Notes: generated by a model from the letters alone, not told the origin. A DNA stretch of 64,000 nucleotides from Macrostomum lignano (GCA_002269645.1 NIVC01000416.1:434001-498000), one strand, 5' to 3'; counted from the stretch's first letter, positions 1 to 61,589 are shown. Program-made: numbers and translations.

Positions 1-10
1 GCCTTCAATC

Positions 11-2194: not shown

Positions 2195-2196
2195 AT

Positions 2197-4674: not shown

Positions 4675-6972
4675 ATGTTTCAAACTTTTACTATATTAGA
4701 CTCTTTGCTAATCTGTGTCGCATTTCAGCTGCAAATCGTGTCACTCATTCTCCTTGATATCTTGCACGGGTGAGTGATCATATTGTGCAGTAGTAACAGT
4801 CCTAACTGTCTCAATAATTACTTATACTCGTGCTTCCAACAACTGCTTCTCTCAGTGCGTCAGCTGGCACTCACTACTGCAATCTTCGCAGCACCCACGA
4901 GATCGCATTGGGTCCGCAGCGGCAGCGAGTCGGAAACGAAACATTTGTTGCCAAGCTCAATCCATTATTGCCCGTTCAACCATTGGTAAATACGAGAAGG
5001 TGCAAGTGGATTCTCACCTGCGCTGGCCTGAGCGAGTTCCCCCTACAGCTGGTGCTGTTGGGCAGCTCTGAGGGTTTGATGCGGTACGAGTACAATGGCA
5101 AACAGTACGATGTGCTGCCAGGCACGATCCATGCCATGGATGTGCTTGACGAGTGAGTCTTGGTTGGGTGCTAACCATAAGCGTTTTGAAACTGTACCTG
5201 ACCCCTGTCTCCAACCCCCCTTTTCCGCAAATACATGAAACCTAATCCACCCAATCCATGACAGATAAGACGCACTACACTCATTACAAATTCTAAAAAT
5301 CGCCAATCCTACAGTCTAACCTGACCGCTTCTCCCACCCACTGCAGCAGCTGCATCATCAAGGTGTCGGCCTCCATGAGCTCCCAGCATCCTGCCACCCC
5401 GGAGCCGCCCAGTCTCACAGCGGTGCTGCTTCATCCCGAGATCTGTGCCAGGGACTTTCTCCAGTTCAAGGGCGGCTGCTACACAGCCAGTCGAATCCGT
5501 CAGAGCTTCAAGGACTTCTCAAGCAGCATCCTGGGCTCTGCTCAGCTGGCCAGCTTCTCCAGCAAGGCTGAGATCAGCAGCTTCATCGAAGCGAGTGAGT
5601 CCACTCGAGACGAGATTGAGTATTGAGATTTAGTATACATTAGAGGAATTCAAGTAACAGCATTAACTACATTCACTTGAGACGTCAATTAAGTGAAATA
5701 AACTTACTTGCTATTATCCCAGACCTGGTCCGAGCGCGGGTTCATCCGTACAGACCGCCTCTGGACCTGACACAGCCGACTCGAATCGCCGTGTTTTACA
5801 GACCCTCCGATCACAGCGTGCTCTCGCTTGCTTGGAATGAGACTCACTGCTCGCTGGAGCCAGTTGCTGAGCTGCAGAGCCTGGCAGATCATCTGTGAGT
5901 ATCTGGGATTCTATATTTTGATAGTTGTTTGTGTGTCTTCTACCTGACTTGTTTGTGTGTCTTCTACCTGACTTGTTTGTGTGTCTTCTACCTGACTTGT
6001 TTGTGTGTCTTCTTCCTGAGTTGTTTGTGTGTCTTCTACCTGACTTGTTTGTGTGTCTTCTACCTGACTTGTTTGTGTGTCTTCTACCTGACTTGTTTGT
6101 GTGTCTTCTACCTGACTTGTTTGTGTGTCTTCTACCTGACTTGTTTGTGTGTCTTCTACCTGACTTGTTTGTGTGTCTTCTACCTGAGTTGTTTGTGTGT
6201 CTTCTACCTGAGTTGTTTGTGTGTCTTCTACCTGACTTGTTTGTGTGTCTTCTATCTGACTTGTTTGTGTGTCTTCTACCTGAGTTGTTTGTGTGTCTTC
6301 TACCTGACTTGTTTGTGTGTCTTCTACCTGACTTGTTTGTGTGTCTTCTACCTGACTTGTTTGTGTGTCTTCTACCTGACTTGTTTGTGTGTCTTCTACC
6401 TGACTTGTTTGTGTGTCTTCTACCTGACTTGTTTGTGTGTCTTCTACCTGACTTGTTTGTGTGTCTTCTACCTGACTTGTTTGTGTTTCTGAACTTCCAG
6501 CCGACGCAGACCGCCAGACCCTCGCACAGCCAAAGCGCCCACCCTGCTCTGCGCACACCTCACCACACCTGCGGAGAAGTCGTTGGCATCGAATTGGTCG
6601 ATCGTCTTCGCTGACTGCGGCACTCCGATGCTGTCGCTGGTGGCCACCCGTCAGGCCCCGCAGTGCAACCTCAGCGATGCCATGCTGAAGGCTTTCAACA
6701 ACGTCGAGACAGGAGCGCCGCTCGGAGGTGTGCAGAATGAGACCCGGCAGCGGTCTCAGACAGAACTGGGCTCGACTTCTGGATTGGGAAGCTCAGGAGG
6801 AACTGTGGCTGCCGCCGTCCTTGTCCCTGGTTTCTTTATTGTATTTTTATTCGCCGTTTTCTTAATCGCTCGGCGAAGGTTTCCGTCGGTTTGCGAGCAT
6901 TCTGAGTCAGGTGCTGACGACGCTCAAACTCTCAGCACAATCAGTTATCCGAGTTCCAGCTGCTCAAATTGA
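4675..6972 (+). CDS. Gene A: 5-exon type I membrane protein, CUB-like + degenerate C-type lectin-like domain (427 aa predicted)
   Basis: Exons 4675-4769, 4856-5152, 5347-5594, 5723-5894, 6501-6972; GT-AG introns with phases 2,2,1,2 give a continuous frame. Hydrophobic leader, CUB-like RCKWIL, CTLD-like CARDFLQFKGGCY..LASFSS, TM VLVPGFFIVFLFAVFLIA. Start codon least certain. Confidence 0.75.
5910..6490. repeat. 24-bp minisatellite (gtttgtgtgtcttctacctgactt) in gene A intron 4
   Basis: Tandem copies seen directly; ends ~10 bp before the acceptor at 6500. Confidence 0.95.
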
Positions 6973-7892
6973 AGCTTTGGCGAGTTTGAGACTATAATTT
7001 AGTATAAATTTGCTTAACCAGTTTACAGTGAAGTTGGCATTGCAGCTGAAATGAATTGCGAAATAACAAAGAGCACAGGGCTCTGAAAGCTAAGTCACTT
7101 TTACTACAGCTTCAAAGGGTGCTACTTAACCGAAAATGTTGTCCTAGAAATTTTTTAATCCATAGAGCTCAAGAGCACCCTCTGTCACAGTTTAGATAAG
7201 CACACCATAAACTGGCCCGCGAAACACAATGAGGACTGCGAGACCAAAGATGCCTTAAGAGAACTGGACCTGCCTAAATTGCCATGTGTGGAGTAGAAAG
7301 TGAAGTTCATTCTCTGTTTAGGTGTGCTTCCCGTGATAAATTTGAACAGGAAATCTCAGATAAAGTTTCGAATTTAAAAGTCTTACAGCAGAAGATAAAG
7401 TGTTTTCCGAATATCTCTAGAAGATAGAGGCCATAATGTAACTTCTAGCAAAATTCACCACAGGCATGACTCAAGCCAGAATGCAGCTGCCCAGAGGCTT
7501 CATATTAGTACGTTACCCGAAAAAAGCTTGAACTCTTTGTTTGCGCAAACGATATTTTAACACTCGTTTCCCCAAAAATACTTCCTCGCCAGCTTTTTTG
7601 TATCAACTAATCTCATAAAATATAATACTCGGCACCCTCTCTGTAATGCTTATCATAATAATGCTTATCAGTAACAATAATAGTAAAATATAAATAATTT
7701 ACAAACGCTTGATGCATTATTCGTATGTTATTGACTTTGCTTGCAGAAATATATTCAAATAGCTAATGTTATGAGGCATGATGGGTAGGTAAAGTATGTA
7801 AAAAGATGGCGCGATTCACAGTCAGGCCCAGACAGCGAGCTCTGTCCTCTGTCAGGCCGCCACAGGCTGCTGATAAAGAAAAAATGAGAGAC

Positions 7893-9340: not shown

Positions 9341-9354
9341 TCCTATATTTCCAT

Positions 9355-12213: not shown

Positions 12214-15200
12214 ATGTGTGAGCGTTTTGGCGAAATCCTTATTATCATCATTTGCGCTGCAAGCATTCTAAGGTGAGTCTGTTGCGGAAATGTCAAAGTG
12301 GGCCAATTTTTTTGCCAATTTGCCAATTCAACGCAAATTTGCGGTCATTTACAATGATTTAAGAAGACTTACACACACTAAATTACGTCTTTCAGCGCCA
12401 CTGCTGGCGAACACCATTGCTACAACTCTCAAATGAATGAAATCGACATTGCCCAACGCCATCAAAAGGACGAGACCCTGATTGCGGAACTGGAACCAAC
12501 CAGTGCTGCTATAAGAGTCTCGCACCCGACACCCACAAACTGTCAATGGGAGATTTCCTGCTCTGGACTGAGGCCAAATGCGTCAATGCAGATGGCACTC
12601 ATTGCAGGCAGGTTCAACAGCAACATCGCCATGCGCTATCTGCTTGGTGAGCAGCAGTACGACGTTTATAACGGCCTAATGCACGGAATCACCCCGGGGA
12701 ATGGGTGAGTACTAACGCTTGGAGTCTTGGGTTATCATGGTATGAGACCAGCTAGCATCTAATTAGCACTCTGAGACAGTGTGAGACCAGCTAGCATCTA
12801 ATTAGCACTCTGAGACAGTGTGAGACCAGCTTACCCATTGTTGTTTTGCATACTACGAGCCTATTTATAGAACATATTTTATATATTTTATATATTACCA
12901 ATGGTAACCGACCCAATCAACCTGCAGGAGCTGCATCATCAAGGTGTCGGCCTCCGTGAGCTCCCAACATCCTCCGGACCCACCCAGTCTAAGAGTGGTG
13001 CTGCTTCAACCCACGACCTGTGCTAGGGGCTTTCTCTATTATCAAGGCGGCTGCTACACAGCCAGTGGAAGCCGTCAGAGCTTCAAGGACTTCTCGAGCA
13101 GCATCCTGGGCTCTGCTCAGCTGGCCAGCTTCTCCAGCATGGCTGAGATCAGCAGCTTCATCACTGCGAGTAGGTAGAGTAGACATGGAGGATAGTGGAG
13201 TAGACATGGAGGATAGTGGAGTAGACATGGAGGATAGTGGAGTAGACATGAAGGATAGTGGAGTAGACATAGAGGATAGTGGAGTAGACATGGAGGATAG
13301 TGGAGTAGACATGGAGGATAGTGGAGTAGACATGGAGGATAGTGGAGTAGACATGGAGGATAGTGGAGTAGACATGGAGGATAGTGGAGTAGACATGGAG
13401 GATAGTGGAGTAGACATGGAGGATAGTGGAGTAGACATGGAGGATTAAAGCGGAGGGAAGCTGAGTTTGATGTAACAGAAAGTGATGAGAAAAGAAATAA
13501 AATATGAGAGCCATGAATAGAGATTTGACAAAACTTCAAAGTCCTTTGCCGAACTTTTCAGACATGGCCATCGTGCCGGACTATTGGCGACCCCTCAGCT
13601 TCACCCAGCCTGTCCGCATCGGTCTGTTCTACCGGACAGCCGATGCTGTCGTCCTGTCACTGGCCTCAAACTCCACCAGCTGCTGGCTACAGCCGGCGCC
13701 TCAGTTTAAACAATTTCGGTGAGCGTCCTGTATGTACTATCTGCACTTTCCGCCTATCCGCTCTCTCCTGACTGTGTGACCCGCTCTCTGACTGTGTGAC
13801 CCGCTCTCTGACTGTGTGACCCGCTCTCTGACTGTGTGACCCGCTCTCTGACTGTGTGACCCGCTCTCTGACTGTGTGACCCGCTCTCTGACTGTGTGAC
13901 CCGCTCTCTGACTGTGTGACCCGCTCTCTGACTGTGTGACCCGCTCTCTGACTGTGTGACCCGCTCTCTGACTGTGTGACCCGCTCTCTGACTGTGTGAC
14001 CCGCTCTCTGACTGTGTGACCCGCTCTCTGACTGTGTGACCCGCTCTCTGACTGTGTGACCCGCTCTCTGACTGTGTGACCCGCTCTCTGACTGTGTGAC
14101 CCGCTCTCTGACTGTGTGACCCGCTCTCTGACTGTGTGACCCGCTCTCTGACTGTGTGACCCGCTCTCTCTCCTGCCTGTGTGACTCTCTCTCCTGCCTG
14201 TGTGACCCTCTCTTCTTCTGTCTGTGTGACCCTCTCGCTCCTGCCTGTGTGATTCTCTCTCCTGCCTGTGTGACTCTCTCTCTCCTGCCTGTGTGATTCT
14301 CTCTCTCCTGCCTGTGTGATTCTCTCTCTCCTGTCTGTGTGATTCTCTCTCCTGCCTGTGTGACTCTCTCTCTCCTGCCTGTGTGATTCTCTCTCCTGCC
14401 TGTGTGACTCTGTCTCTCCTGCCTGTGTGACTCTGTCTCTCCTGTCTGTGTGACTCTCTCTCTCTCCTGCCTATGTGACTCTCTCTCTCTCCTGTCTGTG
14501 TGACTCTCTCTCTCCTGTCTGTGTGACTCTCTCTCTCTTGTCTGTGTGACTCTCTCTCTTGTCTGTGTGACCCTCTCTCTCTCCTGCCTATGTGACTCTC
14601 TCTCTCCTGTCTGTGTGACTCTCTCTCTCTCTCTTGTCTGTGTGACTCTCTCTCTCTCTTGTCTGTGTGACTCTCTCTCTCTCTTGTCTGTGTGACTCTC
14701 TCTCTCGTGTCTGTGTGACTCTCTCTCTCCTGTCTGTGTGACTCTCTCTCTCTTGTCTGTGTGACTCTCTCTCTCTCTTGTCTGTGTGACTCTCTCTCTC
14801 GTGTCTGTGTGACTCTCTCTCTCCTGTCTGTGTGACTCTCTCTCTCTTGTCTGTGTGACTCTCTCTCTCTCTCCTGTCTGTGTGACTCTCTCTCTTGTCT
14901 GTGTGACCCTCTCTCTCTCCTGCCTATGTGACTCTCTCTCTCTTGTCTGTGTGACTCTCTCTCTCTCTCCTGCCTGTGTGACCCTCTCTTCTTCTGTCTG
15001 TGTGACCCTCTCGCTCCTGCCTGTGTGACTCTCTCTCTCTTGTCTGTGTGACTCTCTCTCTCCTGTCTGTGTGAGCCTCTCTCTCCTGTCTGTGTGACCC
15101 TCTCTCTCCTGTCTGTGTGACTCTCTCTCTCTCCTGCCTATGTGACTCTCTCTCTCTCTCCTGTCTGTGTGACTCTCTCTCTTGTCTGTGTGACCCTCTC

Positions 15201-16808
15201 TCTCTCCTGCCTATGTGACTCTCTCTCTCCTGTCTGTGTGACTCTCTCTCTCTCTTGTCTGTGTGACTCTCTCTCTCTCTTGTCTGTGTGACTCTCTCTC
15301 TCTCTTGTCTGTGTGACTCTCTCTCTCCTGTCTGTGTGACTCTCTCTCTCTTGTCTGTGTGACTCTCTCTCTCTCCTGTCTGTGTGACTCTCTCTCTCTC
15401 CTGCCTATGTGACTCTCTCTCTCTTGTCTGTGTGACTCTCTCTCTCCTGTCTGTGTGAGCCTCTCTCTCCTGTCTGTGTGACCCTCTCTCTCCTGTCTGT
15501 GTGACTCTCTCTCTCTCCTGCCTATGTGACTCTCTCTCTCTCCTGTCTGTGTGACTCTCTCTCTCTTGTCTGTGTGACTCTCTCTCTCTTGTCTGTGTGA
15601 CTCTCTCTCTCCTGTCTGTGTGAGCCTCTCTCTCCTGTCTGTGTGACCCTCTCTCTCCTGTCTGTGTGACTCTCTCTCTCTCCTGTCTGTGTGACTCTCT
15701 CTCTCTCTTGTCTGTGTGACTCTCTCTCTCGTGTCTGTGTGACTCTCTCTCTCCTGTCTGTGTGACTCTCTCTCTCTTGTCTGTGTGACTCTCTCTCTCC
15801 TGTCTGTGTGACTCTCTCTCTCCTGTCTGTGTGACTCTCTCTCTCCTGCCTGTATGACCCGCTCTCTTCTGCCTATGTGACTCGCTCTCTCCTGCCTGTA
15901 TGACCCGCTCTCTCCTGCCTGTATGACCCGCTCTCTCCTGCCTTTGTGACTCGCTCTCTCCTGCCTGTATGACCCGCTCTCTCCTGCCTATGTGACTCGC
16001 TCTCTCCTGCCTGTATGACCCGCTCTCTCCTGCCTGTATGACCCGCTCTCTCCTGCCTGTATGACCCGCTCTCTCCTGCCTGTATGACCCGCTCTCTCCT
16101 GCCTGTATGACCCGCTCTCTCCTGCCTGTATGACCCGCTCTCTCCTGCCTGTATGACCCGCTCTCTCCTGCCTGTATGACCCGCTCTCTCCTGCCTGTAT
16201 GACCCGCTCTCTCCTGCCTGTATGACCCGCTCTCTCCTGCCTGTATGACCCGCTCTCTCCTGCCTGTATGACCCGCTCTCTCCTGCCTGTATGACCCGCC
16301 CTCTCCTGCCTGTGTGACCCGCTCTCTCCTGCCTGTATGACCCGCTCTCTCCTGCCTGACTACATGTAATCCACTGTCTCTGCCTCTGTCCAAATGTGTA
16401 CCAAACATCTCTGGAATCTATATTTTCTATACTCGCCCTTAATACACTGCTTTGTTCATTTTCAGGGTGGCCAATGGATCAGAAGGCTTGCTCTGCGGAT
16501 CTCTAAAGCAGCTGGACTCGAGTTCATCGAACTTCAGCATCGAATTCGTTGCTTGCTCCACTCTGCTTCGGTGTCTGGTCAGCTTCCCAGTGAGTGGCAG
16601 ATCGCACAGTCGCTTAGCTTTGTCTTGCGACTTTCTTCAGCTTAAACGTCAGAATTCAGTAGCTGACACGCAGCCTCCGGACCTGATGGAGTCCAAGCTG
16701 AAAGTGCAGACGCCGTTGTCAAGGACGCTAATTATCGTCTTCACTGTTATGGTTAGCTGCACGGTGTTCTGCGGTGTGATCTACTGGGTGTACACACGTT
16801 TAAAGTGA
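12214..16808 (+). CDS. Gene B: 5-exon paralog of gene A (369 aa predicted)
   Basis: Exons 12214-12272, 12396-12704, 12928-13169, 13562-13718, 16466-16808; same phases 2,2,1,2. Leader MCERFGEILIIIICAASIL; exon 3 clearly homologous to gene A exon 3 (SCIIKVSAS..GGCYTAS..RQSFKDFSSSILGSAQLASFSS); C-terminal TM LIIVFTVMVSCTVFCGVIYWVY with almost no tail. Confidence 0.8.
12744..12830. repeat. 39-bp tandem repeat (gagaccagctagcatctaattagcactctgagacagtgt), ~2 copies, gene B intron 2
   Basis: Same unit as 18195-18367. Confidence 0.9.
13179..13446. repeat. 21-bp minisatellite (gtagacatggaggatagtgga) in gene B intron 3
   Basis: Tandem copies begin ~10 bp after the donor at 13170. Confidence 0.95.
13770..16360. 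repeat. CT-rich minisatellite (20-bp ctgactgtgtgacccgctct grading into variable-length (CT)n-containing units) in gene B intron 4
   Basis: Seen directly; several unit variants in blocks. Confidence 0.95.
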
Positions 16809-17782: not shown

Positions 17783-23648
<5,866 letters not shown>

Positions 23649-24690: not shown

Positions 24691-39490
<14,800 letters not shown>

Positions 39491-39533
39491 CGACTTTTTT
39501 CACAATCTCAATCAACTTTTCTAATTACGAGCT

Positions 39534-42800: not shown

Positions 42801-43672
42801 GGACCATTTTTCAAGAAGTCCTCAACAGAGCAGAAGCAAATCAAACAAACAGCAAAAGAATTCAGTAGGATGGATTTCTCGAGAAGAGACTTCCTTGCTG
42901 CCCAACATCAGCTGGGAGCTCGTTAACAGAGAACCGGCCTAAAGGCTGAAGAAGCCCGGATGGAGGAGACGAGCTGTCGCTGAGCAAGAAAGTAAAGAAA
43001 TGCTGGACATCCCTAGGATCATCAGAGACCCCCTGAAGCGTCGTGGAGCAGCGGGAAGTCCGTTCGCTGTACCGTGAGCGGAACTCGACTTGACTCAAAA
43101 GAGGAAAACAGAGCCAAAGGTGTGGCTATGGTGGCGGCTGCAAGTGCCGGCACCGACTTCACTATTTTCACGGATGACTTGGTCAGCGCGGAAGGCAGAG
43201 GCAGAGCTGCAGCGCGAAGCCGTCGTGATGCACTGCGCTGATACCTGCAAGGATGACATTGGAACGGGAGACATCATCGAGAAGCCAGCAGGAGAGGTGA
43301 CCATAGGTGATTTACAGGACCTCGGGCGTAGGGTTTGGCTTGCGTGAGTGCCAGCGCACTCAATGAGCCAGCCAAGGAGGGCGTGAGATCGCAGCGGGAG
43401 CGACTTGAGGCAGACTGAATGCTAAGCTACGTCTTGAGACTGCCAACTTTAGCCTCGACAGATGCCGCAATGTCTTCGGAGGTGGTAACAGGGGAATAAG
43501 ACCGCGTTCAGCTCCATAGCCGTCAGCTTCCGCCGTTTTAGATCGGGACGTTCTCTGGAGCTCGCGTCCGAACTAAGATATCAATAAGGACGCAGAGCGT
43601 TGCAGATGCTGCGCGGTCACCTTCTGGACCAGGGCCAGACACGCCATCACTGAGTTTTCCGACCTATTAGAC

Positions 43673-44350
43673 CAGGGGTCGGCAACCTTTTCTGGGCAAG
43701 GGCCAAATAGCCAAATTTTCAAGGGCTCAGGGGCCAATAACATAAAAAAGTGAAAACCACATTGCATCCACGGACTATTTAATTGCCATTTAATTAGTTT
43801 AACTGCTTAAGTAGTCCGGTAGTAGTTCAGACTGCATCATTTCAGTCTGAACAAACAATTTTTTTATTGATGATTATCAAAACCTCAATTTCACCCCAAC
43901 CATTGAAGTCCCCCAGCCCAAAACCTGCCCTATTCCTTCAATTCTTAATCAAACTCCAATAAACACCCCCTTCTGGAAACATTCAGCCCATCTTCCCCCA
44001 CAGAAGGCCAACACAAAGATAAGGGGTGAGAAAGGTGAGATAGAGAGGGGAAGAAAAAGAAGGTGAACGCATACATGCGCAACCCCCCCCCCCCTAGATT
44101 TACACCGCCTGTGAGACTTACTTTTGACCAAAAATGCGACTTACCTATGAAAGAAAACCTAAACAAAAACAAACTTGATTTCGGGTATACGGCAGAAGTA
44201 ATGATAACCGTATTATAAAGGCTAAATGCCTCGGCATCTAGTTAGTACTCCATCTGTATTTTCCGGTGGGGGCCCCTCACCAGCCGGCCGGATCGGCCGG
44301 ATGTTGCGCATGTACATGTATCAGGTAGAGTGAAGGTTAGAGGGCCGGAT
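43673..44350 (+). mobile_element. Truncated hAT-like non-autonomous element (duplicated at 56918)
   Basis: Starts CAGGGGTCGGCAACC, a typical hAT terminus; GGGCCGGAT subterminal motif near 44342; no matching right TIR seen. Confidence 0.5.
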
Positions 44351-44714
44351 ACAATGCTAGATCAACTTTGTCATCAACAACAACAAACAACAACAACAGC
44401 AGCATCAACAGCTAGTGTTCTGTTGGCTCGTGGACGAGATGACCAACAATGTACACTTTAATTGTTTTCATAACTTGCATGTGGAAAAGTCTGGCAAATT
44501 TACGATGGAAACGAGAAATTCAAAATTTGTAGAGAATTGTACAGTTTGTAGAGAACGATTGCATACTCGTATATTTTCTAACTAAATCTGAGTTATCCTT
44601 ATTTACCAGAAAAGACCGGACTAATCAAGTATAATCGTAAAGAAGGCTTTCTTTGCCTTTGCTAGTTCAATCAGCAAGCAACTGCCAAGAGCTGTCATTC
44701 CCAAAAGCGCTGAA

Positions 44715-44758
44715 ATGCTCAGCCTCTGGTTACTGTGGACATGCAGCATCCTGCTTGG
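44715..44758 (+). other. Extra copy of signal-peptide exon 1 upstream of gene E (MLSLWLLWTCSILLG, phase-2 donor GTAAGC)
   Basis: Part of a ~210-bp block duplicated at ~45783-46010; same arrangement upstream of F (57960-58003). Confidence 0.75.
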
Positions 44759-44854
44759 GTAAGCAAATAACCTTTTAACAATTGATTACCGCAACAAATA
44801 TGCAACAAACAAAAAAAGACATCAAGCGCATTTGAAGATACAACTGCTGGTATG

Positions 44855-45235
44855 ACTCATTTTTGCGCCGCAGACACTCACTTTTGCGCCGCAGACACTC
44901 ATTTTGGCGCCACAAGCGGGCACTCATTTTGGCGCCACAAGCGGGCACTCATTTTGGCGCCACAGGCATTCATTTTTGCGCCGCAGACACTCATTTTGGC
45001 ACCACAAGCGGGCACTCATTTTGGCGCCAGAGGCACTCATTTTGGCGCCACAAGCGGGCACTCATTTTGGCACCACAAGCGGGCACTCATTTTGGCGCCA
45101 GAGGCACTCATTTTGGCTTCACAGGCACTCATGTTGGTGCCACAGGCAGGCACTCATTTCGGCTCCACAGGCATTTATTTTGGCGCCACAGGCAGGCATT
45201 CATTTTGGCGCCACAGGCACTCATTTTTGCTATAT
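44855..45235. repeat. Degenerate minisatellite (cactcattttggcgccacaagcggg), also at 58095-58430
   Basis: Seen directly; copy number differs between the two duplication units. Confidence 0.9.
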
Positions 45236-45942
45236 TTTGGCACTGTGGGGCAAAATTTTTGATCTTCATAAAGTGTCACAAGGTGGAGTGGCCGGGTCAA
45301 AGCATTGGCATGTCACCCATAGCTTTTACTGGGAAGGCATGTCCCACTGTCAACCCCTCGATGGCGACGCGCCTGCGTTAGACATAGTTATCACTATAGA
45401 ATTAAAGTGTTCAAAGTTACCTGTTATTGGCACTCTCATGCCTCAGTCATGCAATGGAATAGTCGAGCCAATTTCACATGTACAGCCAATAATCCGTTGG
45501 CTGACCATCCATTCCAGAATGCTACATGTATGTTTAGAATTCCTTACTGAAATAGCTGTAATAGGCTGTGAAGGGACTGCTTTTTAATGATGTTTACATG
45601 TAAAACCATAACACTAACTCATTGTACACACAGGCACTTTTGGCATGATTTCGGGCGCGGAGGGGTGGGCAAACGAAAAATTCCATGACAATTTCATGGT
45701 CAAGTATTTATCGAACCTGTAACTAAACTAAACTACAAGCGATTTAATATTCTTGACAGCTCTGTCCAAACGACCGTATACACTTTCTAACTAAATCTGA
45801 ATTATCCTTTATTTTGCGAGAGTTTGTATAGGATTACGAGCTTATAATAAAGCTTATAATAATAAAGAAGGAAGCTTTCTTTACCTTTGCTAATTCAATC
45901 AGCAAGCAACTGCCAAAAGCTGTCATTCCCACAAGCGCTCAA

Positions 45943-48409
45943 ATGCTCTGCCTCTGGTTACTGTGGACCTGCAGCATCCTGCTTGGGTAAGCAAATCTTT
46001 AACAACGTATTGTTGTCCTTTTTACAAGAAATACAAAAAGAATACTATGTAAGGTCGCTAATACTTGGCTTTTATTGCTTTGGAATGAATGCGTCACGTT
46101 CGACCCGAGTAGTTACTTTATAACCTTTGTGGTCGAGGCATGACATTGAATTTTAGCCTAGCTTAAACAATATTTTCGAGTGTAAACGTTGAGCAATCCA
46201 TTGTCTACGACATAATAACTCTTGGTACATGACTACAAAATGCGAGCTATTTTTCTGGAAAAAAAACAAACTGACTTTAAGAAAACAGGATGTAAGAAAT
46301 TAAGATGCCAAATCGAATCGGTACACAGAGACACTGAATTTCAAGAAAGGCTATCATGCATGGCAGCTATTTGATTTTGACTTTGATTTTAGATTTCTCT
46401 GGCTTGACAATACGCTCGTAGAACATAGCACTGATTATGACAAAAAAATGTTTTCATATATTTATAAAATGTCTGAAGCATGCTATCATAAATTAACTTC
46501 AAACCTCTCGCAGAGCCGAGGCGGGACACTACTACTGCCGCGTCGGTGGAACAGTTGTTGAAATCAGCGACCGACATGGACGCGTTGATCACTTGGTACT
46601 TCCATGGCAAGAAAACGCGATCAGCTCAGCCAATATAAGTCACGAATGCAAATGGCAGTTCGAAGGCAATTTTAGTAGTGATCCCATCATGCTCCTGAGA
46701 GGATTTGACACATCCAAGGTGGACCTGAGTCGCAGAAGGGTCATCAGATCCGCTGAGTCTTCGATTTCGAGTTCGAGTTCGCCAGCTGCACGAATTCAGT
46801 ACCGATTCATGCTCTATCCTTGTGAGTAATCAGATTTAATTTTTCGACTATGAAATTATTAATTCAATCGATTTAATGAAAGTTTTATTAAACTAAAATC
46901 ATCTTACTGAGTGGTGACGTTTTCAAGCTTGGCTCCAGTTATCCAATAAATTACCTAAACATCAAACTGAGCTATAAGCAAATCTACTGAAACGCAGCTC
47001 ATAGTTTGATTTCACAAACAATAACTTTTAATTCATTTCCTCCTTCAGCCGTTTCTAAAGTCCTGCCAGTCCTGCACTGGCACTCTGTGGACCTGGACAC
47101 AGTTCACGCTTTGCAGCTTTCAAAACGGTCGGTTGTTACCGTTCTCTGAACTGTTGGTTTGGTGAGACTTCATTTTTATTCGAATAGCTGAACCTTCTTT
47201 CTCATTTCAGGGCTGATTTGATTGTCAAGTTAATCGCCAACTCCAGCAGGAATCCCCACGACACACCGGGTCTGCAAATCCAGCTGATGGAGCCCGGATT
47301 CTGCAGCACAGATGTTGCCTACTTTGAGCACAGCTGCTACACAATCTCATCGGCTCGGAGGTCGCTGAAAGCAGAGCTGACTGCAATCTGCAGCGATGGA
47401 GGACTCGCACAGCTGGCCACTTTTAACAGCTCCAGCGCTCTGCAGAACTTTGTGGCTCAAAGTAAGCTGCCATGGTTAACAACGTAACAAGTGACTGAAG
47501 ATTGCATGGTTGCGCAATTTGACTCAAACTCTGTCGATGACTTTTGCAGGCCAGCGGACCATTGTTGGAACCGGTCTGGACGCCCACAGCAAAACTCCGC
47601 TGAATCTCACACAGCCAGTTCGCATCGGGCTTCTGCACGATCGACTGACTGGCTCCATTTTCTACCTCAGCAACTCAAATGGCGAACTGGAACTGAAGCC
47701 GCTGGTCGAGTCGAAAATTCTGTGAGCATTTTCTCTTTGGTCTTGCTCTCCATCAGCTGCCAATCATAAAGTGCTCGTATTTCTTAACTGCAGCTACTAC
47801 AATGTTTGGCCTACGAGTTCGAGATTCTCATGCGGCTCCCTCAGACTTGCTCAGACAGCCGATGGCACCGAGGTGTCCTTCGGAGTCGTCGAGTTTGTCA
47901 GCTGCAGTGAGTCGCTGCCGGCGCTGCTCAGCTTTCGAGACACCGCCAGAAACTGCTGCTGCAGCTGCAGCGCCAGAGCTGTGCTCAGCCAGATTGAAAA
48001 TGCGGGATCTCACGTAGTTTTCCTTAAGACTTCCACTGAATCATCTAATACCACACCCAGTCCGAGACCTCGGTCGGAAACCGTATCAAAAATCAGTTGG
48101 TCTGATGCTGCTGCTCCGAAATCGGATTCCACAGACAGTCGCCGAGAATTTTCGCAAGAGACTGAAATGAAGAGAGTTGACTTCGAGTCGTACTTTATTC
48201 CGTTTTTAGCCGTGCTTGCTTGCGTGATTTTATTAAGTATAGGCATGATCATTGGCGCTTATTACTTTTGTTACAGGATTCGCTCGCCTCCACCGGGCAC
48301 ATTGACCCGTAATTATTACACGGAAAGCACGCTGGGGCCAAGCAGGACTTCAAGTTTAGCCCGTAACCCAAATGATATTTTATTGGACCCCAGCAACCAT
48401 TGCAGTTAG
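45943..48409 (+). CDS. Gene E: 6-exon CUB-like + CTLD-like type I membrane protein (489 aa predicted)
   Basis: Exons 45943-45986, 46514-46821, 47049-47127, 47211-47461, 47550-47721, 47794-48409; open frame, 1470 nt; CUB-like HYYC..LPW..ECKWQFEG..IMLLRGFD; CTLD-like FCSTDVAYFEHSCY..AICSDGGLAQLATFN; TM IPFLAVLACVILLSIGMIIGAYYF. Confidence 0.85.
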
Positions 48410-48454
48410 CGACTTTTTTCTCACAGTCTCAATCAACTTTTCTAATTACGAGCT

Positions 48455-49476: not shown

Positions 49477-52400
49477 CACAGACCAAGAAATATAACTAGA
49501 CTGCGCATGAGGGTAAAAAAAGTTGTGCCTTTTTCCTAGTAGGAAAAGTGGCACCCCAGTGCCCACTCCCCCACGATCGATAATTGTGCCCGGGCCTTTC
49601 TTCTTACCCTCAGCCAACTCAGCTTGTCGGGGTCTCTTTTTTCTTTATGTTCGTAACTAGTGAAAATTCAGACTCAGTAAGAAATAGGATTAACAAATCA
49701 ACAACTACAGATTCATTTTTAATTTATCTAGAATTTTTTGCACGCATTTAATGGCAAATATATAGTTTATCACGGGAATAAGCTTAAACAGAATGCATTG
49801 AAGCCATAACTTACCAGCCTCCATATGCGAATACGCTGATTACAAATTAAGAAAAATCGCTGTTCGAAGCAGCCTTTGCCTCTTGCCGGGTTTTCTTCCA
49901 GCGCGTGAAAGATCCTTAGCCAGCTTCTTCATTCGAATATTTATAAAAAGCATAGCCATTACTCGAATCAAATGCAGCTTGTGAGACTCAATGCTGATAC
50001 TCGCGGATGCCGAATGAGAGTCCAGTTCAGGGAACAGATCGATTGACATGCGCAGAATCTCCTGAACAGCTACATCACTAGAGAATCCGCTGCTGTAGCT
50101 GGCACGCCGAACAACAGTCTCTGCATTGAGCAGCACCCGCAGGACATTGCTGCTAGGAAAAATCAGGCCGCCAGTTCCTTCCTTGTTCAAAACATTTTTT
50201 ATGGCAACGAGTGAGCATGGTCCGCGTGAAGCTCCTGGCGTCTCAGAGCTTGCGATCAGAGCTGACCTGCACGGAGCACATTCAACTGCTTTCATCATTC
50301 TTCGGACGACCGCGCCTGCGATATAGCACACGATGGACTGGCAAATTTCACACACCGATGCATTCTTGCAGTGTTGGATTGAACCCAGACTCAGTCCCAT
50401 TTCATTTTGAGCTTTCATCTGCTTCCATGGCTGCTGTCCTGATGATGATGGCAGACAAGACAATGATAACTGAATAGTGGCATCCTGCTGCCTCACATTC
50501 GGACTCACGGACTGTAGAATTCCACCTCCGGCATGCACCAACAGCTGCCTGAATGCTGAGCGAAATTGCGTGGGCGTTGGGTTATGGTTCCAGCCATTTC
50601 GTAGCCTTACTGCATTAAAAAACAGTTCGAGAAAATCCTGCGAAAGCTTGTAAGTGCAAAGAAAGAAGGATTCGCCAGTCGAAAATAAATACTTAGCGAG
50701 CTCCATAATGCCATGGCAGTTGGTGATGAAGCCTAGGAAGCCAGTCTTCTTTGCGGTTTCTACTATCTTACAGCCAGCCGGAGTTTCAAGGCTACGGAGA
50801 AGTTCGATCGAGCTAGAGAAGAAATCGATCCAATCCGACTGATTGTCAGCTCTAAGCGCCATTTTGGCGCCATAACTGACCAGCCGCTTGGAATTGAAAG
50901 CGTCGAACAAATCATTCATGTGCTCAACGAAATCTGCGGTGACTAGCACATCAGAGTGCTCAAATCCGATCACACCTTGCTGATGCACCCATCGCAAAGA
51001 GTCGGCCACTGACTTGCTAAACAGTTGTGATGCCAAATAGACCTTCATCTTTAAATTAGCAAAGTTGATGTGATGCCTGCTTAACTTGTTTCCAAGTCGG
51101 AGTCCATGACTTTCTTGTACTTGCTGCAACATGGAAACATATTTCCATTCAATATTTCCTCTGTTCGGCCAAACAAATCTTCCCAGTGACTGCCACTGAT
51201 TGCGAATCAGCTTTAACATGTGAGGCACATCCAGGAAGGCTGCAACCTGAATGCTAGGATCGCAGGGGTGCGGGAAGCAGGCGACGACCTCGTTCGGAGA
51301 ACTTATCCTGGAGCCAAGGAGTTCGATCGCTCGAATGTTGTGCTGAGTTCCATCGCATGTGAATGATGTTGCTATGACGCCAACCTGGTACAGTCGCTGA
51401 ATGGATTCCTCTACAACGCTCGAAAGAAATTCGCCGTCAACTCCATTCACTAGAAAATACCCTAAAGGCAGCTTCCAATAGCTCTTAAGCCCCACTGCCA
51501 TCACTACCAATGCCGAAGACGCCTCCTGATCACTTGGTTTGCCATCACCTTTGTCAACGTAGCCAAAAAACATACCTTCGCTTGAATTCCATTCAATCAT
51601 CGACTCTAGCGACATTTCATCAGCAACAACGTTGCAGTAGTCAAAGGCTTGGCCGTCAGTGGAGCTGCGTCGCCGCGAAAGTTCCTGGAAAGCCTGATCG
51701 CAAAACCCTGGAAAGCACTTTGCATTTGAGCGCCATTTTCTGAGTGACGCAGGATGTGGAAGCTGAAAGTACTTTCGTACATACTCATAAGCCTTCGGAC
51801 TATAGAAATGCAATGTAGAGGCGAATTTGCGCACTTCGTCAGAGAACCTCTTTGTCCTTTTTCTATTGCAAGGCACGATGCTGCTCAGCAGTGAATCGGA
51901 GGTCAAGAAATTCAATCGAGATGCCGCTGCTTCGTTTAACATACACTTGGCCTTTAGATCCAGAATTGCGTCCTTCAATGTTTTGGCTCTATGTTTAATT
52001 TGCCTGTGCTTTGAGCGCAGAGATCGAATTTTTCTGTACTTGCTCTGTACCGTCCGACGCAGGATTTCAATGGCCTTAGCACTTTTCTTAGATCTCTTAT
52101 GAGCAGCCAAAAGCCTTTTGTATCTGCGCCTCAGGTTTTTTAGGACTCTCACCTTTTCTTCGAATAGTTCTCTGGCCACACAGTTGGCATGCAGTTCTTG
52201 TAGGGGTTGTTCTGGTTCATCTGCCTCCGTGTCAGTTGGCTGAGCCTTCGTCTTGCTACATTCCGGCGCTTTCAAAAATGCAGCAAAGTCAACTTCCTGA
52301 GCAGCGGCGGCGGCGGCGGTGGCTGTTTTTCGCTTCTTTTCAACAGGCTGCAGGCGGTCAGGGAGCGTCGGGAAGATAGAAGGAACAGCATTTGGATACA

Positions 52401-52965
52401 GCCGCCTTCTTGTGGTGGGCAGAAAGCCGGCTAGTTGTTCCTTGAAGCAAGACTCTGCAAAGTGGACCGAGCAGACTTGGGTGGTCGCCGATGGTTTGAA
52501 CTCCTTGCGTCGGAGCGCAACCAGCCACTTTCTCTTCATTTCAGTGTCTTTTGGAAAAAAATGGAAGGACACTGCCGGAGACATTGACGAGTTGTTCGAG
52601 CAGCCTAGAGCGCAGCAAAAGCTGCCGTGACTTTTTCTGCTAGGCAGTTTTGAAGAATTAGATTCTTCCATGGCAGTTCGATTTGGTGAGGATTGATTTA
52701 GATTAGACTGAAGCAGCTTGCTTTGTATTTCAAGTATGTGTTTTATAAGTTTATATTTTTGGCCCCAGACCACTTTAATATATAGCTACATATCAACGCA
52801 GGCGGAAAGAAAAGCAGGCCTGTACCCTAACTTCTTGCCCAAGCACAATTATCGATCGTTTTCGAGTAGGGAGAGAGGGACCATTTTTTCCACTGTCATT
52901 TGGTCAAAAACAAGCCCAAGCAAGAAATGCGGGATGCGCAGTCTAGTTATATTTCTTGGTCTGTG
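49477..52965 (-). mobile_element. P-element/THAP9 superfamily DNA transposon, apparently complete
   Basis: Perfect 32-bp TIRs CACAGACCAAGAAATATAACTAGACTGCGCAT (49477-49508, 52934-52965); 8-bp TSD GTTCTGTG; inner inverted motif cgatcgataattgtgc. Confidence 0.95.
49840..52671 (-). CDS. THAP-domain P-type transposase (943 aa from the likely ATG at 52671)
   Basis: THAP C2CH (CCALGC...VCSVHF...AVPSIF), coiled coil, catalytic motifs VADEM, TCDG, FLDVPHMLK, SQDFLELFF; intronless and stop-free. Confidence 0.95.
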   Translation of the reverse strand: MEESNSSKLPSRKSHGSFCCALGCSNNSSMSPAVSFHFFPKDTEMKRKWLVALRRKEFKPSATTQVCSVHFAESCFKEQLAGFLPTTRRRLYPNAVPSIFPTLPDRLQPVEKKRKTATAAAAAAQEVDFAAFLKAPECSKTKAQPTDTEADEPEQPLQELHANCVARELFEEKVRVLKNLRRRYKRLLAAHKRSKKSAKAIEILRRTVQSKYRKIRSLRSKHRQIKHRAKTLKDAILDLKAKCMLNEAAASRLNFLTSDSLLSSIVPCNRKRTKRFSDEVRKFASTLHFYSPKAYEYVRKYFQLPHPASLRKWRSNAKCFPGFCDQAFQELSRRRSSTDGQAFDYCNVVADEMSLESMIEWNSSEGMFFGYVDKGDGKPSDQEASSALVVMAVGLKSYWKLPLGYFLVNGVDGEFLSSVVEESIQRLYQVGVIATSFTCDGTQHNIRAIELLGSRISSPNEVVACFPHPCDPSIQVAAFLDVPHMLKLIRNQWQSLGRFVWPNRGNIEWKYVSMLQQVQESHGLRLGNKLSRHHINFANLKMKVYLASQLFSKSVADSLRWVHQQGVIGFEHSDVLVTADFVEHMNDLFDAFNSKRLVSYGAKMALRADNQSDWIDFFSSSIELLRSLETPAGCKIVETAKKTGFLGFITNCHGIMELAKYLFSTGESFFLCTYKLSQDFLELFFNAVRLRNGWNHNPTPTQFRSAFRQLLVHAGGGILQSVSPNVRQQDATIQLSLSCLPSSSGQQPWKQMKAQNEMGLSLGSIQHCKNASVCEICQSIVCYIAGAVVRRMMKAVECAPCRSALIASSETPGASRGPCSLVAIKNVLNKEGTGGLIFPSSNVLRVLLNAETVVRRASYSSGFSSDVAVQEILRMSIDLFPELDSHSASASISIESHKLHLIRVMAMLFINIRMKKLAKDLSRAGRKPGKRQRLLRTAIFLNL

Positions 52966-59136: not shown

Positions 59137-61589
59137 ATGCTCAGCCTCTGGTTACTGTGGACATATAGCATCCTGCTTGGGTAAGCAAATCTTTAACAAC
59201 GTATTGTTGTCCTCTTTACAAGAAATACAAAAAGAATACTATATAAGGTCGCTAATACTTGGCTTTTATTGCTTTGAAATGAATGCGTCACGTTCGACCC
59301 GAATAACTACTTTATAAGCCTTGTGGTCGAGGCATGACATTGAATTTTAGCCTAGCTTAAACAACATTTTCGAGTGTAAACGTTGAGCAATCCATTGTCT
59401 ACGACATAATAACTCTTGGTACATGACTACAAAATATTTTTCTGGAAAAAACCAAACTGACTTTCAGAAAACAGGATGTCAAAAAATTAAGATGCCAAAT
59501 CGAATCGGTACACAGAGACACCGAATTTCAAGAAAGGCTATCATGCATGGCAGCTATTTGATTTTGACTTTGTTTTTAGATTTCTCTGGCTTGACAATAC
59601 GCTCGTAGGACAAAGCACTGATTATGACAAAAAAGAAGTTTTCATATATTTATAATATGTCTGAAGCATGCTATCATAAATTAACTTCAAACCTCTCGCA
59701 GAGCCGAGGCGGGACACTACTACTGCCGCGTCGGTGGAACAGTTGTTGAAATCAGCGACCAATATGGACGCGTTGATCACTTGGTACTTCCATGGAAAGA
59801 AAACGCGATCAGTTCAGCCAATATAAGTCACGAATGCAAATGGCAGTTCGAAGGCAATTTTAGTAGTGATCCCATCATGCTCCTGAGAGGATTTGACACA
59901 TCCAAGGTGGACCTGAGTCGCAGAAGGGTCATCAGATCCGCTGAGTCTTCGATTTCTAGTTCGAGTTCGCCAGCTGCACGAATTCAGTACCGATTCGTGC
60001 TCTATCCTTGTGAGTAATCAGATTTAATTTTTCGACTATGGAATTATTAATTCAATCGATTTAATGAAAGTTTTATTGAACGAAAATCATCTTACTGAGT
60101 GGTGACTTTTTCAAGTTATCCAATAAATTACCTAAACATCAAACTGAGCTATAAGCAAATCTACTGAAACGCAGCTCATAGTTTGATTTCAGAAACAATA
60201 ACTTTTAATTCATTTCCTCCTTCAGTCGTTTCTAAAGGAACGTGTCCTGCTAGAGCTAATCGAGACTGGCACTCTGTGGACCTGGACACAGTTCACGCTT
60301 TGCAGCTTTCAAAACGGTCGGTTGTTACCGTTCTCTGAACTGTTGGTTTGGTGAGACTTCATTTTTATTCGAATAGCTGAACCTTCTTTCTCATTTCAGG
60401 GCTGATTTGATTGTCAAGTTCATCGCCAACTCCAGCAGGAATCCCCACGACACACCGGGTCTGCAAATCCAGCTGATGGAGCCCGGATTCTGCAGCACAG
60501 ATGTTGTCTACTTTGAGCACAGCTGCTACTCAATCTCATCGGCTCGGAGGTCGCTGAAATTAGAGCTGACTGCAATCTGCAGAGATGCAGGACTCGCACA
60601 GCTGGCCAGCTTTAACAGCTCCAGCGCTCTGCAGAACTTTGTGGCTCAAAGTAAGCTGCCATGGTTATAAGTGGCTGAGGATTGCATGATTACGCAATTT
60701 GACTCAAACTCTGTCGATGACATTTGCAGGCCAGCTGACCATTGTTGGAACGGGTCTGGACGCCCACAGCAAAACTCCGCTGAATCTCACACAGCCAGTT
60801 CGCATCGGGCTTCTGCACGATCGACTGAATGACTCCATTTTCTACCTGAGTAATTCAAAGGGCGAGCTGGAGCTGAAGCCGCTTGTCGACTCAAATAATC
60901 TGTGAGCATTTTCTCTTTGGATTTGCTCTCCATCAGGTGCCAGTCATAAATTGCTCGTATTTCTTAACTGCAGCTACTACAATGTCCGACCTACGAGCTC
61001 GAGATTCTCGTGCGGCTGCCTCAGACTTGCTCAGACAGCCGATGGCACCGAGGTGCCCTTCGGAGTCGTCGAGTTTGTCAGCTGCAGCGAGTCGCTGCCG
61101 GCGCTGCTCAGCTTTCGAGACACCGCCAGAAACTGCTGCTGCAGCTGCAGCGCCAGAGCAGTGCTCAGCCAGATTAAAGGTGCGGAATCTCACGTAGTTT
61201 TCTGTAAGACTCCCACTGAAGCATCTAACACGACACCCAATCCGAGACCTCGGTCGGAAACCGTATCAAAAATCAGTAGTTCTGATGCTGCTGCTCCGAA
61301 ATCGGATTCCACAGACAGTCGCCGAGAAATTTCGCAAGAGACTGAAATGAAGAGAGTTGACTGCGATTTGTACTTTATTCCATTTTTTGCCGTGCTTGCA
61401 TACGCGATTTTGTTAAGTATAGGCATGATTATTGGCGCTTGCTACTTTTGGTACAGGATTCGCTTGCCTCCACCGGGCTCATTTACTCGTATTTATTACA
61501 CGGAAAGCACGCTGGGGCCAAGCAAGTCTTCAAGTTTAGTTCGTAACCCTGCTGATATTTTATTGGACCCCAGCAACCATTGCAATTAG
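59137..61589 (+). CDS. Gene F: 6-exon CUB-like + CTLD-like type I membrane protein (493 aa predicted)
   Basis: Exons 59137-59180, 59702-60009, 60226-60316, 60400-60650, 60730-60901, 60974-61589; open frame, 1482 nt. Confidence 0.85.

What the first reader, a model, noticed from the sequence alone, without database searches (positions are those of the whole stretch)
4675..61589. Hidden tandem cluster of six cell-surface receptor genes: candidate invertebrate immune/allorecognition complex
Seen: hand-splicing gives five open-frame genes (A, B, D, E, F) with signal peptide, CUB-like module, C-type-lectin-like module, stalk, TM and short or absent tail. They share homologous exons in the same intron phases (242-251-nt phase 2-1 exon; 157-172-nt phase 1-2 exon). 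A sixth, structurally unrelated Ig-type receptor with a signalling tail (C) lies between B and D, all on one strand. Paralogs range from near-identical (E/F) to barely alignable (A vs D). Established: clustered, fast-diverging CTLD or Ig receptors with recombination between copies characterise the vertebrate NK complex, the Hydractinia Alr complex and nematode CUB/CLEC arrays. Inference: this may be an undescribed recognition locus in which tail-less CUB-CTLD sensors co-operate with a Tyr-motif signalling receptor.
Basis: partly seen in the sequence, partly recalled or inferred. Interest (0 to 1): 0.88.

Follow-up and report, generated by a model that had tools for sequence, protein, structure and literature searches.

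The report
Flatworm surface-receptor gene cluster, two families
This stretch of the flatworm Macrostomum lignano genome carries six intact cell-surface receptor genes from two flatworm-specific families that swap exon-sized pieces with each other, but nothing yet links them to immunity or self-recognition.

Summary
The window is Macrostomum lignano contig NIVC01000416.1. Five paralogues (A, B, D, E, F) and one unrelated receptor gene (C) splice open on the + strand with GT-AG introns and shared phases. D, E and F need one extra 79-91-nt exon that a five-exon splice skips. D and E match the transcript-derived GenBank models PAA83509.1 and PAA83511.1 exactly. C (13 exons, 744 aa) is 97.8% identical to an annotated homeolog.

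No Pfam model hits any member. However, a family profile hits only C-type-lectin-like domains in the PDB. An AlphaFold model (pLDDT 75) matches NK-type CTLDs and neuropilin CUB domains. The CTLD lacks the sugar/Ca2+ motifs. The Ig nature of C is only weakly supported.

Both families were found almost only in M. lignano. They are interleaved again at another locus, and the whole block is duplicated as a homeolog. Exon-scale gene conversion is clear: A/B exon 3, the 3' half of D against E, and a ~600-bp N-terminal block shared by all C-like genes.

Pairwise dN/dS is 0.35-0.6. There are no ITAM/ITIM motifs and no charged transmembrane residues. The immune/allorecognition reading and the sensor-adaptor pairing remain speculation. 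This is a new variant of a clustered receptor family, of moderate interest.

The parts
4675..6972 (+). Gene A. CUB-CTLD type-I membrane protein, 427 aa, 5 exons: 4675-4769, 4856-5152, 5347-5594, 5723-5894, 6501-6972. Intron 4 holds a 24-bp minisatellite (5925-6490).
   Evidence: Open GT-AG model. It aligns with the family. The exact sequence is not in the public protein collection. Minisatellite.
12214..16808 (+). Gene B. CUB-CTLD type-I membrane protein, 369 aa, 4-aa tail, 5 exons: 12214-12272, 12396-12704, 12928-13169, 13562-13718, 16466-16808. Introns 3 and 4 hold minisatellites.
   Evidence: Open GT-AG model. All exons and splice sites are kept in the homeolog L002 at 94-100% nt identity. 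dN/dS against the homeolog for exons 1-4 is about 0.1, from 3 synonymous and 1 non-synonymous change.
5341..5596 (+). A/B exon-3 conversion tract, paired with 12922-13171. It encodes the N-terminal half of the CTLD.
   Evidence: 88% nt identity, confined to the exon. Synonymous difference is 0.14 here against 0.65-0.89 in the other A/B exons.
17783..23648 (+). Gene C. Weakly Ig-like type-I receptor, 744 aa, 13 exons: 17783-17873, 17941-18129, 18389-18613, 18679-18857, 18935-19100, 19232-19389, 19571-19736, 20688-20869, 20969-21113, 21846-21985, 22077-22251, 22346-22446, 23331-23648. Four ~105-115-aa modules are each split by a phase-0 intron. The tail contains YDVP, VYER, RYGD and YINW.
   Evidence: Open GT-AG model, 728/744 identical to P0048 = BOX15_Mlig007224g1. 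Not among the called genes of this contig. There are 26 M. lignano relatives. Only weak Ig evidence: CADM4 E=0.039 and C2-set_2 in 2 of 14 members.
17932..18526 (+). Homogenised block of the C family: exon 2, intron 2 with its 39-bp minisatellite, and the first ~135 nt of exon 3. It encodes the near-invariant N-terminal domain.
   Evidence: 90-98% nt identity to at least 8 paralogues on three other loci whose remaining sequence blastn does not align, apart from one 126-bp match at 71% in exon 8. Synonymous difference is 0-0.07 in seven of the nine copies compared.
24691..39490 (+). Gene D = PAA83509.1 (BOX15_Mlig017891g1), 489 aa, 6 exons: 24691-24737, 25133-25425, 37969-38059, 38293-38543, 38631-38802, 38875-39490. 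Intron 2 is 12.5 kb.
   Evidence: The model equals P0001 exactly. The gene range matches the annotated range. AF2 model of this protein has pLDDT 75 and pTM 0.69.
26990..31339 (+). LTR retrotransposon inserted in a (GACA)n array inside intron 2 of D. LTRs at 26990-27148 and 31181-31339; gag-PR-RT-RNaseH-IN ORFs at 27177-29597 and 29648-31144.
   Evidence: LTRs are 99.4% identical. Pfam RVT_1, RNase H, rve and aspartyl protease hits. The stretch 26989-37403 is absent from homeolog L002.
38305..40217 (+). 3' half of D (CTLD, stalk, TM, tail and 3' flank), which is E-like. It pairs with 47223-49155.
   Evidence: 92% nt identity. D/E dS is 0.08 in the CTLD part against 1.08 in the CUB part.
45943..48409 (+). 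Gene E = PAA83511.1 (BOX15_Mlig022272g1), 489 aa, 6 exons: 45943-45986, 46514-46821, 47049-47127, 47211-47461, 47550-47721, 47794-48409. Exon 3 (47049-47127) is 12 nt shorter than its counterpart in D and F and lacks a Cys.
   Evidence: Exact match in the protein collection. The annotated gene range is identical.
59137..61589 (+). Gene F. Tandem copy of E, 493 aa, 6 exons: 59137-59180, 59702-60009, 60226-60316, 60400-60650, 60730-60901, 60974-61589.
   Evidence: Open GT-AG model. 88% aa identity to E, dS 0.105, dN/dS 0.55. Not in the protein collection.
40212..48412 (.). First unit of the E/F tandem segmental duplication. The second unit is 53482-61592.
   Evidence: 94-96% nt identity over 8 kb.
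49840..52773 (-). Intact P-element/THAP9-like transposase ORF (977 aa) lying between the two duplication units.
   Evidence: Pfam THAP, Tnp_P_element and TNP-like RNaseH/GBD, E 1e-15 to 7e-38.

Best explanation
Shown: the interval holds six intact, same-strand genes of Macrostomum lignano. Five of them (A, B, D, E, F) belong to a family found almost only in this species. They are type-I membrane glycoproteins with a signal peptide, a CUB-fold domain, a divergent C-type-lectin-like domain without the sugar/Ca2+ residues, a Ser/Thr/Pro-rich stalk, one transmembrane helix and a 4-44-aa tail. The sixth (C) belongs to a second M. lignano family of multi-module, weakly Ig-like type-I receptors. It has a near-invariant N-terminal domain and a ~110-aa tail bearing tyrosines and prolines.

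Shown: the array grew by tandem duplication (the 13-kb E/F unit). It exists a second time as a collinear homeologous block. Its members exchange exon-sized segments by gene conversion. Similar mixed arrays of the two families occur elsewhere in the genome.

Inferred: these are cell-surface binding receptors forming a recognition/adhesion repertoire. The CUB-CTLD head most likely binds a protein or other non-sugar ligand, as NK-type CTLDs and LOX-1 do. Signalling would run through their own short tails or through associated membrane proteins. The tissue, the ligand and any link to immunity are unknown.
For: - Gene models.
- Exact identity of D and E to GenBank models. That annotation is built from RNA-seq and transcript assemblies (PMC5730564).
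- The C homeolog is annotated and 97.8% identical.
- All B, C and D exons and splice sites are conserved in homeolog L002.
- dN/dS is below 1 for every pair: 0.1-0.55.
- CTLD: all 32 PDB hits of the family profile are CTLDs, best E 2e-4. A coral mannose-receptor-like CTLD protein is the only non-Macrostomum hit of the exhaustive search, E 1e-5.
- Folds: the AF2 model (pLDDT 75) matches LOX-1, NKp80, NKR-P1B, Mincle and CLEC5A at TM 0.6-0.77. It also matches neuropilin-2 CUB (6gh8_A, TM 0.56; 8ivx_A) and the CUB-containing Gpr126 ectodomain.
- Family restriction: 33 hits among 1.84 billion representatives; every one whose source was shown is M. lignano, apart from that coral protein and one repetitive protein whose source was not looked up.
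- Gene conversion.
- Second mixed array: L004 holds at least 7 C-like and at least 3 CUB-CTLD genes, all on one strand.
Against: - No expression, localisation, ligand or phenotype data were obtained for any of the six genes.
- A, B, F and this copy of C are not in the public protein set. They may be filtered out (the GenBank set dropped transcripts overlapping repeats) or silent.
- No member reaches any Pfam CUB, Lectin_C or Ig threshold.
- The CUB assignment rests on a predicted structure and on UniRef names.
- The non-sugar-ligand inference comes only from missing motifs.
Confidence: 0.6

Rival explanations
1. One reading: an immune or allorecognition complex in which tail-less CUB-CTLD sensors signal through the neighbouring Tyr-motif Ig receptor C.
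For: - Clustered CTLD and Ig-like receptor genes with recombination between copies.
- The two families are interleaved at a second, independent locus.
- The B-C-D order is kept in the homeolog.
- The constant N-terminal domain of the C family could be a shared docking surface.
- The tail of C has YDVP and YINW.
Against: - There is no ITAM or ITIM, and no charged residue in any transmembrane segment to pair receptor with adaptor (sequences).
- D, E and F carry their own 44-aa tails.
- dN/dS is 0.35-0.6 in the ligand-binding domains.
- There are no polymorphism or infection data.
- The homeolog linkage is explained by genome doubling (PMC5730564).
- From general knowledge, the solitary life style gives no setting for allorecognition.
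Confidence: 0.12
2. Reproduction-related recognition proteins, for example sperm, egg or female-tract surface molecules. Such genes evolve fast and lineage-specifically in Macrostomum.
For: - Both families were found almost only in M. lignano, and no orthologues were found elsewhere.
- Constraint is relaxed, with dN/dS 0.4-0.6.
- Rapid evolution of reproduction-related genes is reported for the genus (title and abstract of PMC7336406).
Against: - The gene identifiers were not found in the supplementary tables held for three M. lignano expression papers, though those files are truncated.
- There is no tissue information at all.
Confidence: 0.13
3. Largely decaying duplicates in a redundant neopolyploid genome. 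Only D and E would be working genes, with A, B, F and this copy of C on the way to becoming pseudogenes.
For: - A, B, F and C are absent from the public protein collection or gene calls.
- The genome has 180 Mb of duplicated blocks at 95% identity or more (PMC5730564).
- Introns are full of minisatellites and transposons.
- E has lost 12 nt and a Cys from its third exon, 47049-47127.
Against: - All six reading frames are open across 5-13 exons, with every splice site canonical.
- B and C keep all exons and sites in both homeologs.
- Non-synonymous change lags synonymous change in every comparison.
- The GenBank set removed transcripts overlapping repeats, which can explain the gaps.
Confidence: 0.1

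Closest known systems
Vertebrate NK-complex and related CTLD receptors (LOX-1, NKp80, NKR-P1B, CD69, CLEC5A, NKG2D)
   Same: They are the best structural matches to the CTLD of gene D, at TM 0.6-0.77, and the best sequence-profile matches. Like many of them, this CTLD lacks the Ca2+/sugar motifs. Both sets of genes lie in tandem clusters with exchange between copies.
   Different: NK-complex receptors are type-II proteins with the CTLD as their only globular domain. They signal by ITIMs or by a charged transmembrane residue that recruits adaptors. Here the proteins are type I, carry a CUB domain in front of the CTLD, and have neither feature.
Nematode CLEC proteins that combine CUB and C-type lectin domains (from general knowledge, not tested here)
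   Same: They share the CUB plus CTLD domain pair, a large lineage-specific expansion and a clustered gene arrangement.
   Different: The nematode proteins are mostly secreted and are recognised by standard domain models. The flatworm proteins are membrane-anchored and escape every Pfam model. No sequence relationship was detected.
Type-I membrane CTLD proteins of vertebrates (layilin, chondrolectin, CD302) and CUB-bearing receptors (neuropilins, NETO, attractin), from general knowledge
   Same: They have single-pass type-I topology with a CTLD or CUB head and a short tail. Neuropilin-2 CUB is the best CUB structural match. Attractin also carries both a CUB and a CTLD.
   Different: None has the simple CUB-CTLD-stalk-TM architecture, and none forms tandem arrays. 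No sequence homology was detectable beyond the domain folds.
Hydractinia Alr allorecognition complex
   Same: It is a genomic complex of many type-I receptors with divergent Ig-like domains that standard models miss. It has tandem organisation and recombination between members.
   Different: Alr genes are defined by extreme allelic polymorphism, homophilic binding and a colony fusion/rejection phenotype. None of these is shown here, and the animal is not colonial. In the C family the membrane-distal N-terminal domain is the constant part. CUB-CTLD genes are not part of Alr.

Membership tests
CUB domain | A roughly 110-residue beta-sandwich (jelly-roll) fold | tested here: met
   The AF2 model of D has pLDDT of about 70-90 over residues 20-170, apart from a loop at 86-98. 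Foldseek matches neuropilin-2 CUB1 (6gh8_A: prob 1.0, TM 0.56), NRP2 (8ivx_A) and the Gpr126 ectodomain.
CUB domain | Match to the curated sequence model (Pfam PF00431) | tested here: not met
   No hit at E up to 10 in any of 29 family members. UniRef does call many members 'CUB domain-containing', but the basis for those names was not reproduced here.
CUB domain | Four conserved cysteines forming two disulfides | tested here: inconclusive
   The first pair (C23 and C60, in the CxW motif) is invariant in alignment A1. For the second pair, D and F have only one Cys in the extra exon. E, A and B have none.
C-type lectin-like domain (CTLD) | The CTLD fold: a beta hairpin, two helices and a beta sheet | tested here: met
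   pLDDT is 85-97 over residues 170-350. Foldseek prob is 1.0 and TM 0.6-0.77 to many CTLDs.
C-type lectin-like domain (CTLD) | Detectable sequence relationship to known CTLDs | tested here: met
   All 32 PDB matches of the family profile are CTLDs (CD69 at 2e-4, DC-SIGN and DC-SIGNR at 6e-4), covering the N-terminal half. A coral CTLD protein scores E 1e-5. Pfam Lectin_C itself does not hit single members.
C-type lectin-like domain (CTLD) | Ca2+/carbohydrate-binding motifs (EPN or QPD, and WND) | tested here: not met
   In alignment A4 the WND position reads (V/I)(E/V)F followed by xxC, and no EPN or QPD is present. This is therefore a CTLD, not a lectin in the strict sense.
Vertebrate NK gene complex-type receptors | Type-II topology, with an ITIM or a charged transmembrane residue for adaptor pairing | tested here: not met
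   The N-terminal signal peptide and C-terminal transmembrane segment give type-I topology. There is no D, E, K or R inside any transmembrane segment, and no ITIM (sequences).
Immunoglobulin superfamily (gene C) | An Ig fold recognised by sequence or structure | tested here: inconclusive
   The family profile hits only the CADM4 Ig domain, at E 0.039. Pfam C2-set_2 is weak in 2 of 14 members, best E 0.0024. Fourteen of the 26 relatives are named 'Ig-like domain-containing' by UniRef. Four modules are phase 1-1 units of ~105-115 aa.
Allorecognition complex (Hydractinia Alr, Botryllus fuhc type) | Extreme allelic polymorphism and a self/non-self phenotype mapped to the locus | not testable with these tools
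   Only one genome and its internal duplicates were available. The homeologs differ by about 1-2% in exons, which reflects duplication and is not a measure of allelic diversity.

The most novel reading that the evidence does not exclude
The two families may form one flatworm-specific recognition system that expands as a unit. In this reading, the C-like receptors keep a DNA-level homogenised 'constant' N-terminal domain, maintained by gene conversion across loci and perhaps helped by the minisatellite in intron 2. Their Ig-like modules and the neighbouring CUB-CTLD proteins diversify. The constant domain would serve as the common interface between the two kinds of protein.
Probability: 0.15. 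Interest if true: 0.75.

Novelty: new variant of a known kind. Interest (0 to 1): 0.45.

Why it matters
Flatworm surface recognition receptors are almost unknown. M. lignano is the one flatworm with routine transgenesis and RNAi, so these genes can be tested directly.

The locus also gives a clean example of how a receptor repertoire is built in a young polyploid. It shows tandem duplication, transposon insertion into introns without loss of splicing, and exon-precise gene conversion. That conversion keeps one domain constant across paralogues that are otherwise unalignable.

It is also a caution for annotation. Both families are invisible to Pfam, and four of the six genes are missing from the public protein set.

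Tried and rejected
- Pfam scans of all models and of 29 plus 14 family members gave no CUB, Lectin_C or convincing Ig hit.
- A first AF2 run with a shallow 13-row alignment failed (pLDDT 38) and was not used.
- Aligning A/B exon fragments as separate rows misplaced them (alignment A2), so that alignment was dropped.
- Word-indexed homologue searches with E and with the family profile found only 4-5 D/E-like proteins. The exhaustive search was needed to see the family.
- Gene identifiers were absent from paper texts and from the truncated supplements of three M. lignano papers. No expression information was obtained.
- My five-exon D, E and F models and my first 11-exon C model were rejected after comparison with P0001 and P0048.
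- UniRef 'X domain-containing' names for the older M. lignano proteins are erratic (Reelin, LAM_G, Ricin B, protein kinase and others). I used them only where they were consistent across many members.
- The capsid-sized ORF at 411-1694 has no PDB or phage match.

Full report
**Origin of the window.** A homologue search with my first splice of gene E returned only Macrostomum lignano proteins. One of them, P0001, lies on GenBank contig NIVC01000416.1 of assembly GCA_002269645.1. The fetched locus shows that window position 14691 is record position 448691. The window is therefore a piece of the published Mlig_3_7 genome. That genome is a recent polyploid with 180 Mb of duplicated blocks at 95% identity or more (PMC5730564).

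**The five paralogues.** Hand-splicing guided by three-frame translations gave five-exon open models for A, B, D, E and F. Every intron is GT-AG and the phases are identical.

Comparison with P0001 showed that D has one more exon (37969-38059), and that its second exon ends four bases earlier at a stronger GTGAGT donor. With this change my D model equals PAA83509.1 residue for residue. The equivalent six-exon E model equals PAA83511.1. F has the same extra exon and is open at 493 aa. In E the extra exon is 12 nt shorter and lacks a cysteine. A and B have no counterpart, and their CUB region is shorter.

So the D and E junctions have RNA support, including the D splice across a 12.5-kb intron. 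The absence of A, B, F and C from the public protein set is not evidence that they are silent.

**Gene C.** The exhaustive search returned a fused older prediction (P0014) containing a C-like part. A search with my first C model then returned P0048 (BOX15_Mlig007224g1). Guided by these, C resolves into 13 exons (17783-23648) encoding 744 aa, 728 of them identical to P0048. The protein has:
- a signal peptide;
- a ~125-aa N-terminal domain encoded by exons 2-3;
- four modules of ~105-115 aa, each a phase 1-1 unit split by a phase-0 intron;
- a transmembrane helix;
- a tail of about 110 aa with YDVP, VYER, RYGD and YINW.

There is no ITAM or ITIM.

**What the domains are.** No Pfam model hits any member of either family.

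For the five paralogues, the exhaustive HMMER search found 33 proteins. Every one whose source was shown is M. lignano, except a coral mannose-receptor-like protein with canonical tandem CTLDs (E 1e-5) and one repetitive protein whose source was not looked up. A profile of 29 family members matched 32 PDB sequences, all of them CTLDs (CD69, DC-SIGN, CLEC4 members, mannose receptor 2, NKG2A, Clr), with best E 2e-4.

A first AlphaFold run with a shallow alignment failed. With 37 family sequences, the model of D reached pLDDT 75 and pTM 0.69, and 85-97 across the CTLD. Foldseek against the PDB gave CTLDs of the NK/LOX-1/Mincle type at TM 0.6-0.77. It also gave neuropilin-2 CUB domains and the CUB-containing Gpr126 ectodomain.

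The CTLD lacks EPN/QPD. It has (V/I)(E/V)F where lectins have WND (alignment A4), so sugar binding through Ca2+ is unlikely.

For C, the evidence for Ig domains is thin. It consists of one PDB hit (a CADM4 Ig domain, E 0.039), weak C2-set_2 hits in 2 of 14 members and UniRef names.

**Genomic context and evolution.** Self-comparison shows a 13-kb tandem duplication that produced E and F (40212-48412 and 53482-61592, 94-96% identical). An intact P-element/THAP9-like transposase lies between the two units. A young LTR retrotransposon (LTRs 99.4% identical) sits inside a (GACA)n array in intron 2 of D.

A second contig carries the collinear homeolog, with B-like, C-like (P0048), D-like (P0003) and E-like genes in the same order and strand. 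It is 91-98% identical and lacks the retrotransposon stretch. All B, C and D exons and splice sites are kept there.

A third locus (L004, 97 kb) holds at least seven C-like genes interleaved with at least three CUB-CTLD genes or fragments, all on one strand. These are far more divergent paralogues. The co-clustering of the two families is therefore not only a product of the recent genome doubling. The window itself holds no further members.

**Mosaic evolution.** Three cases are clear:
- A and B are saturated at synonymous sites in exons 2, 4 and 5 (pS 0.65-0.89) but differ by only 0.14 in exon 3. The nucleotide match stops at the exon borders.
- D and E have dS 1.08 in the CUB half and 0.08 from the CTLD onwards, with the switch at about 38305.
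- A ~600-bp block of C (17932-18526) covers exon 2, the minisatellite-bearing intron 2 and the start of exon 3. It is 90-98% identical at the DNA level to at least eight paralogues on three other loci. Apart from one 126-bp match at 71% in exon 8, blastn aligns nothing else of those genes. Synonymous differences are 0-0.07 in seven of the nine copies compared.

The third case means concerted evolution of one domain in an otherwise diverging family.

**Selection.** Pairwise Nei-Gojobori estimates give:

| Pair | dN/dS |
|---|---|
| E/F, overall | 0.55 |
| E/F, CUB | 0.59 |
| E/F, CTLD | 0.37 |
| D/E | 0.47 |
| A/B | 0.38 |
| C vs homeolog | 0.40 |
| B vs homeolog, exons 1-4 | ~0.1 |

This is relaxed purifying selection. 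Only the short stalk exceeds 1, on few sites. Site-specific positive selection cannot be excluded with these data.

**Interpretation.** The genes are real and the domain architecture is as proposed. The locus behaves like a birth-and-death receptor array with gene conversion.

The functional reading is not supported by anything measured. There are no adaptor-pairing transmembrane charges and no ITAM or ITIM. D, E and F have their own tails. There are no polymorphism or expression data, and the animal's biology offers no obvious place for allorecognition.

I consider a cell-surface recognition/adhesion repertoire with unknown ligands the best-supported statement. Immune, reproductive and partly degenerating readings remain live rivals.

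The short same-strand spacing (about 1 kb for B-C and C-D) may point to co-transcription of B, C and D. So may the fused B-C and CTLD-C predictions in the older annotation (P0049, P0014) and the frequency of polycistronic, trans-spliced units in this species. I could not test this.

Noticed in passing
window 1-2850: A compact run of + strand ORFs (11-367, 411-1694, 1844-2194, 2197-2847). The last has a Walker-A motif and weak P-loop NTPase hits. The third has an HW...D...CG pattern that recalls adenain/Ulp1-type cysteine proteases. From memory this looks like the capsid-protease-ATPase module of a Polinton/Maverick-like element. The 427-aa ORF has no Pfam, PDB or phage match.
   Followed up: partly
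window 5925-6490, 13177-16358, 18194-18368, 19877-20662, 21286-21728, 22459-23272, 25467-26989, 32901-35471: Almost every long intron of A, B, C and D is filled by a minisatellite or microsatellite (units of 4-67 bp, up to 380 copies). Copy numbers differ between the window and its homeolog; for example, intron 9 of C is 732 nt here and 2241 nt there.
   Followed up: partly
window 4360-4635, 39534-39808, 48455-48731: A ~280-bp repeat lies just downstream of D and of E. An inverted copy lies just upstream of A (83-86% identity). It may be a small mobile element or a shared 3' flank.
   Followed up: no
window 17941-18526 (gene C exons 2-3): The near-invariant N-terminal domain of the C family runs from a Cys after the signal peptide to '...LPLELQLEDPC', with 'GPRWLVMQLRQPMMLEAVSV' in the middle. 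From memory this pattern recalls discoidin (F5/8 type C) domains. No model or PDB sequence matched it, so this is an untested lead.
   Followed up: partly
P0017 (older M. lignano assembly) versus window 4856-5152 and 12928-13169: A predicted protein from the earlier assembly joins A-type exon 2 to B-type exon 3. This is either an assembly collapse or a real recombinant haplotype.
   Followed up: no
window 62372-63995: A 23-bp satellite array (71 copies) runs to the end of the window, downstream of F.
   Followed up: no
C-termini of A, D, E and F (6958-6969, 39476-39487, 48395-48406, 61575-61586): The otherwise unalignable tails of A and of D, E and F end alike (…SSCSN, …NHCS, …NHCS, …NHCN). 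This may be a conserved C-terminal motif.
   Followed up: no
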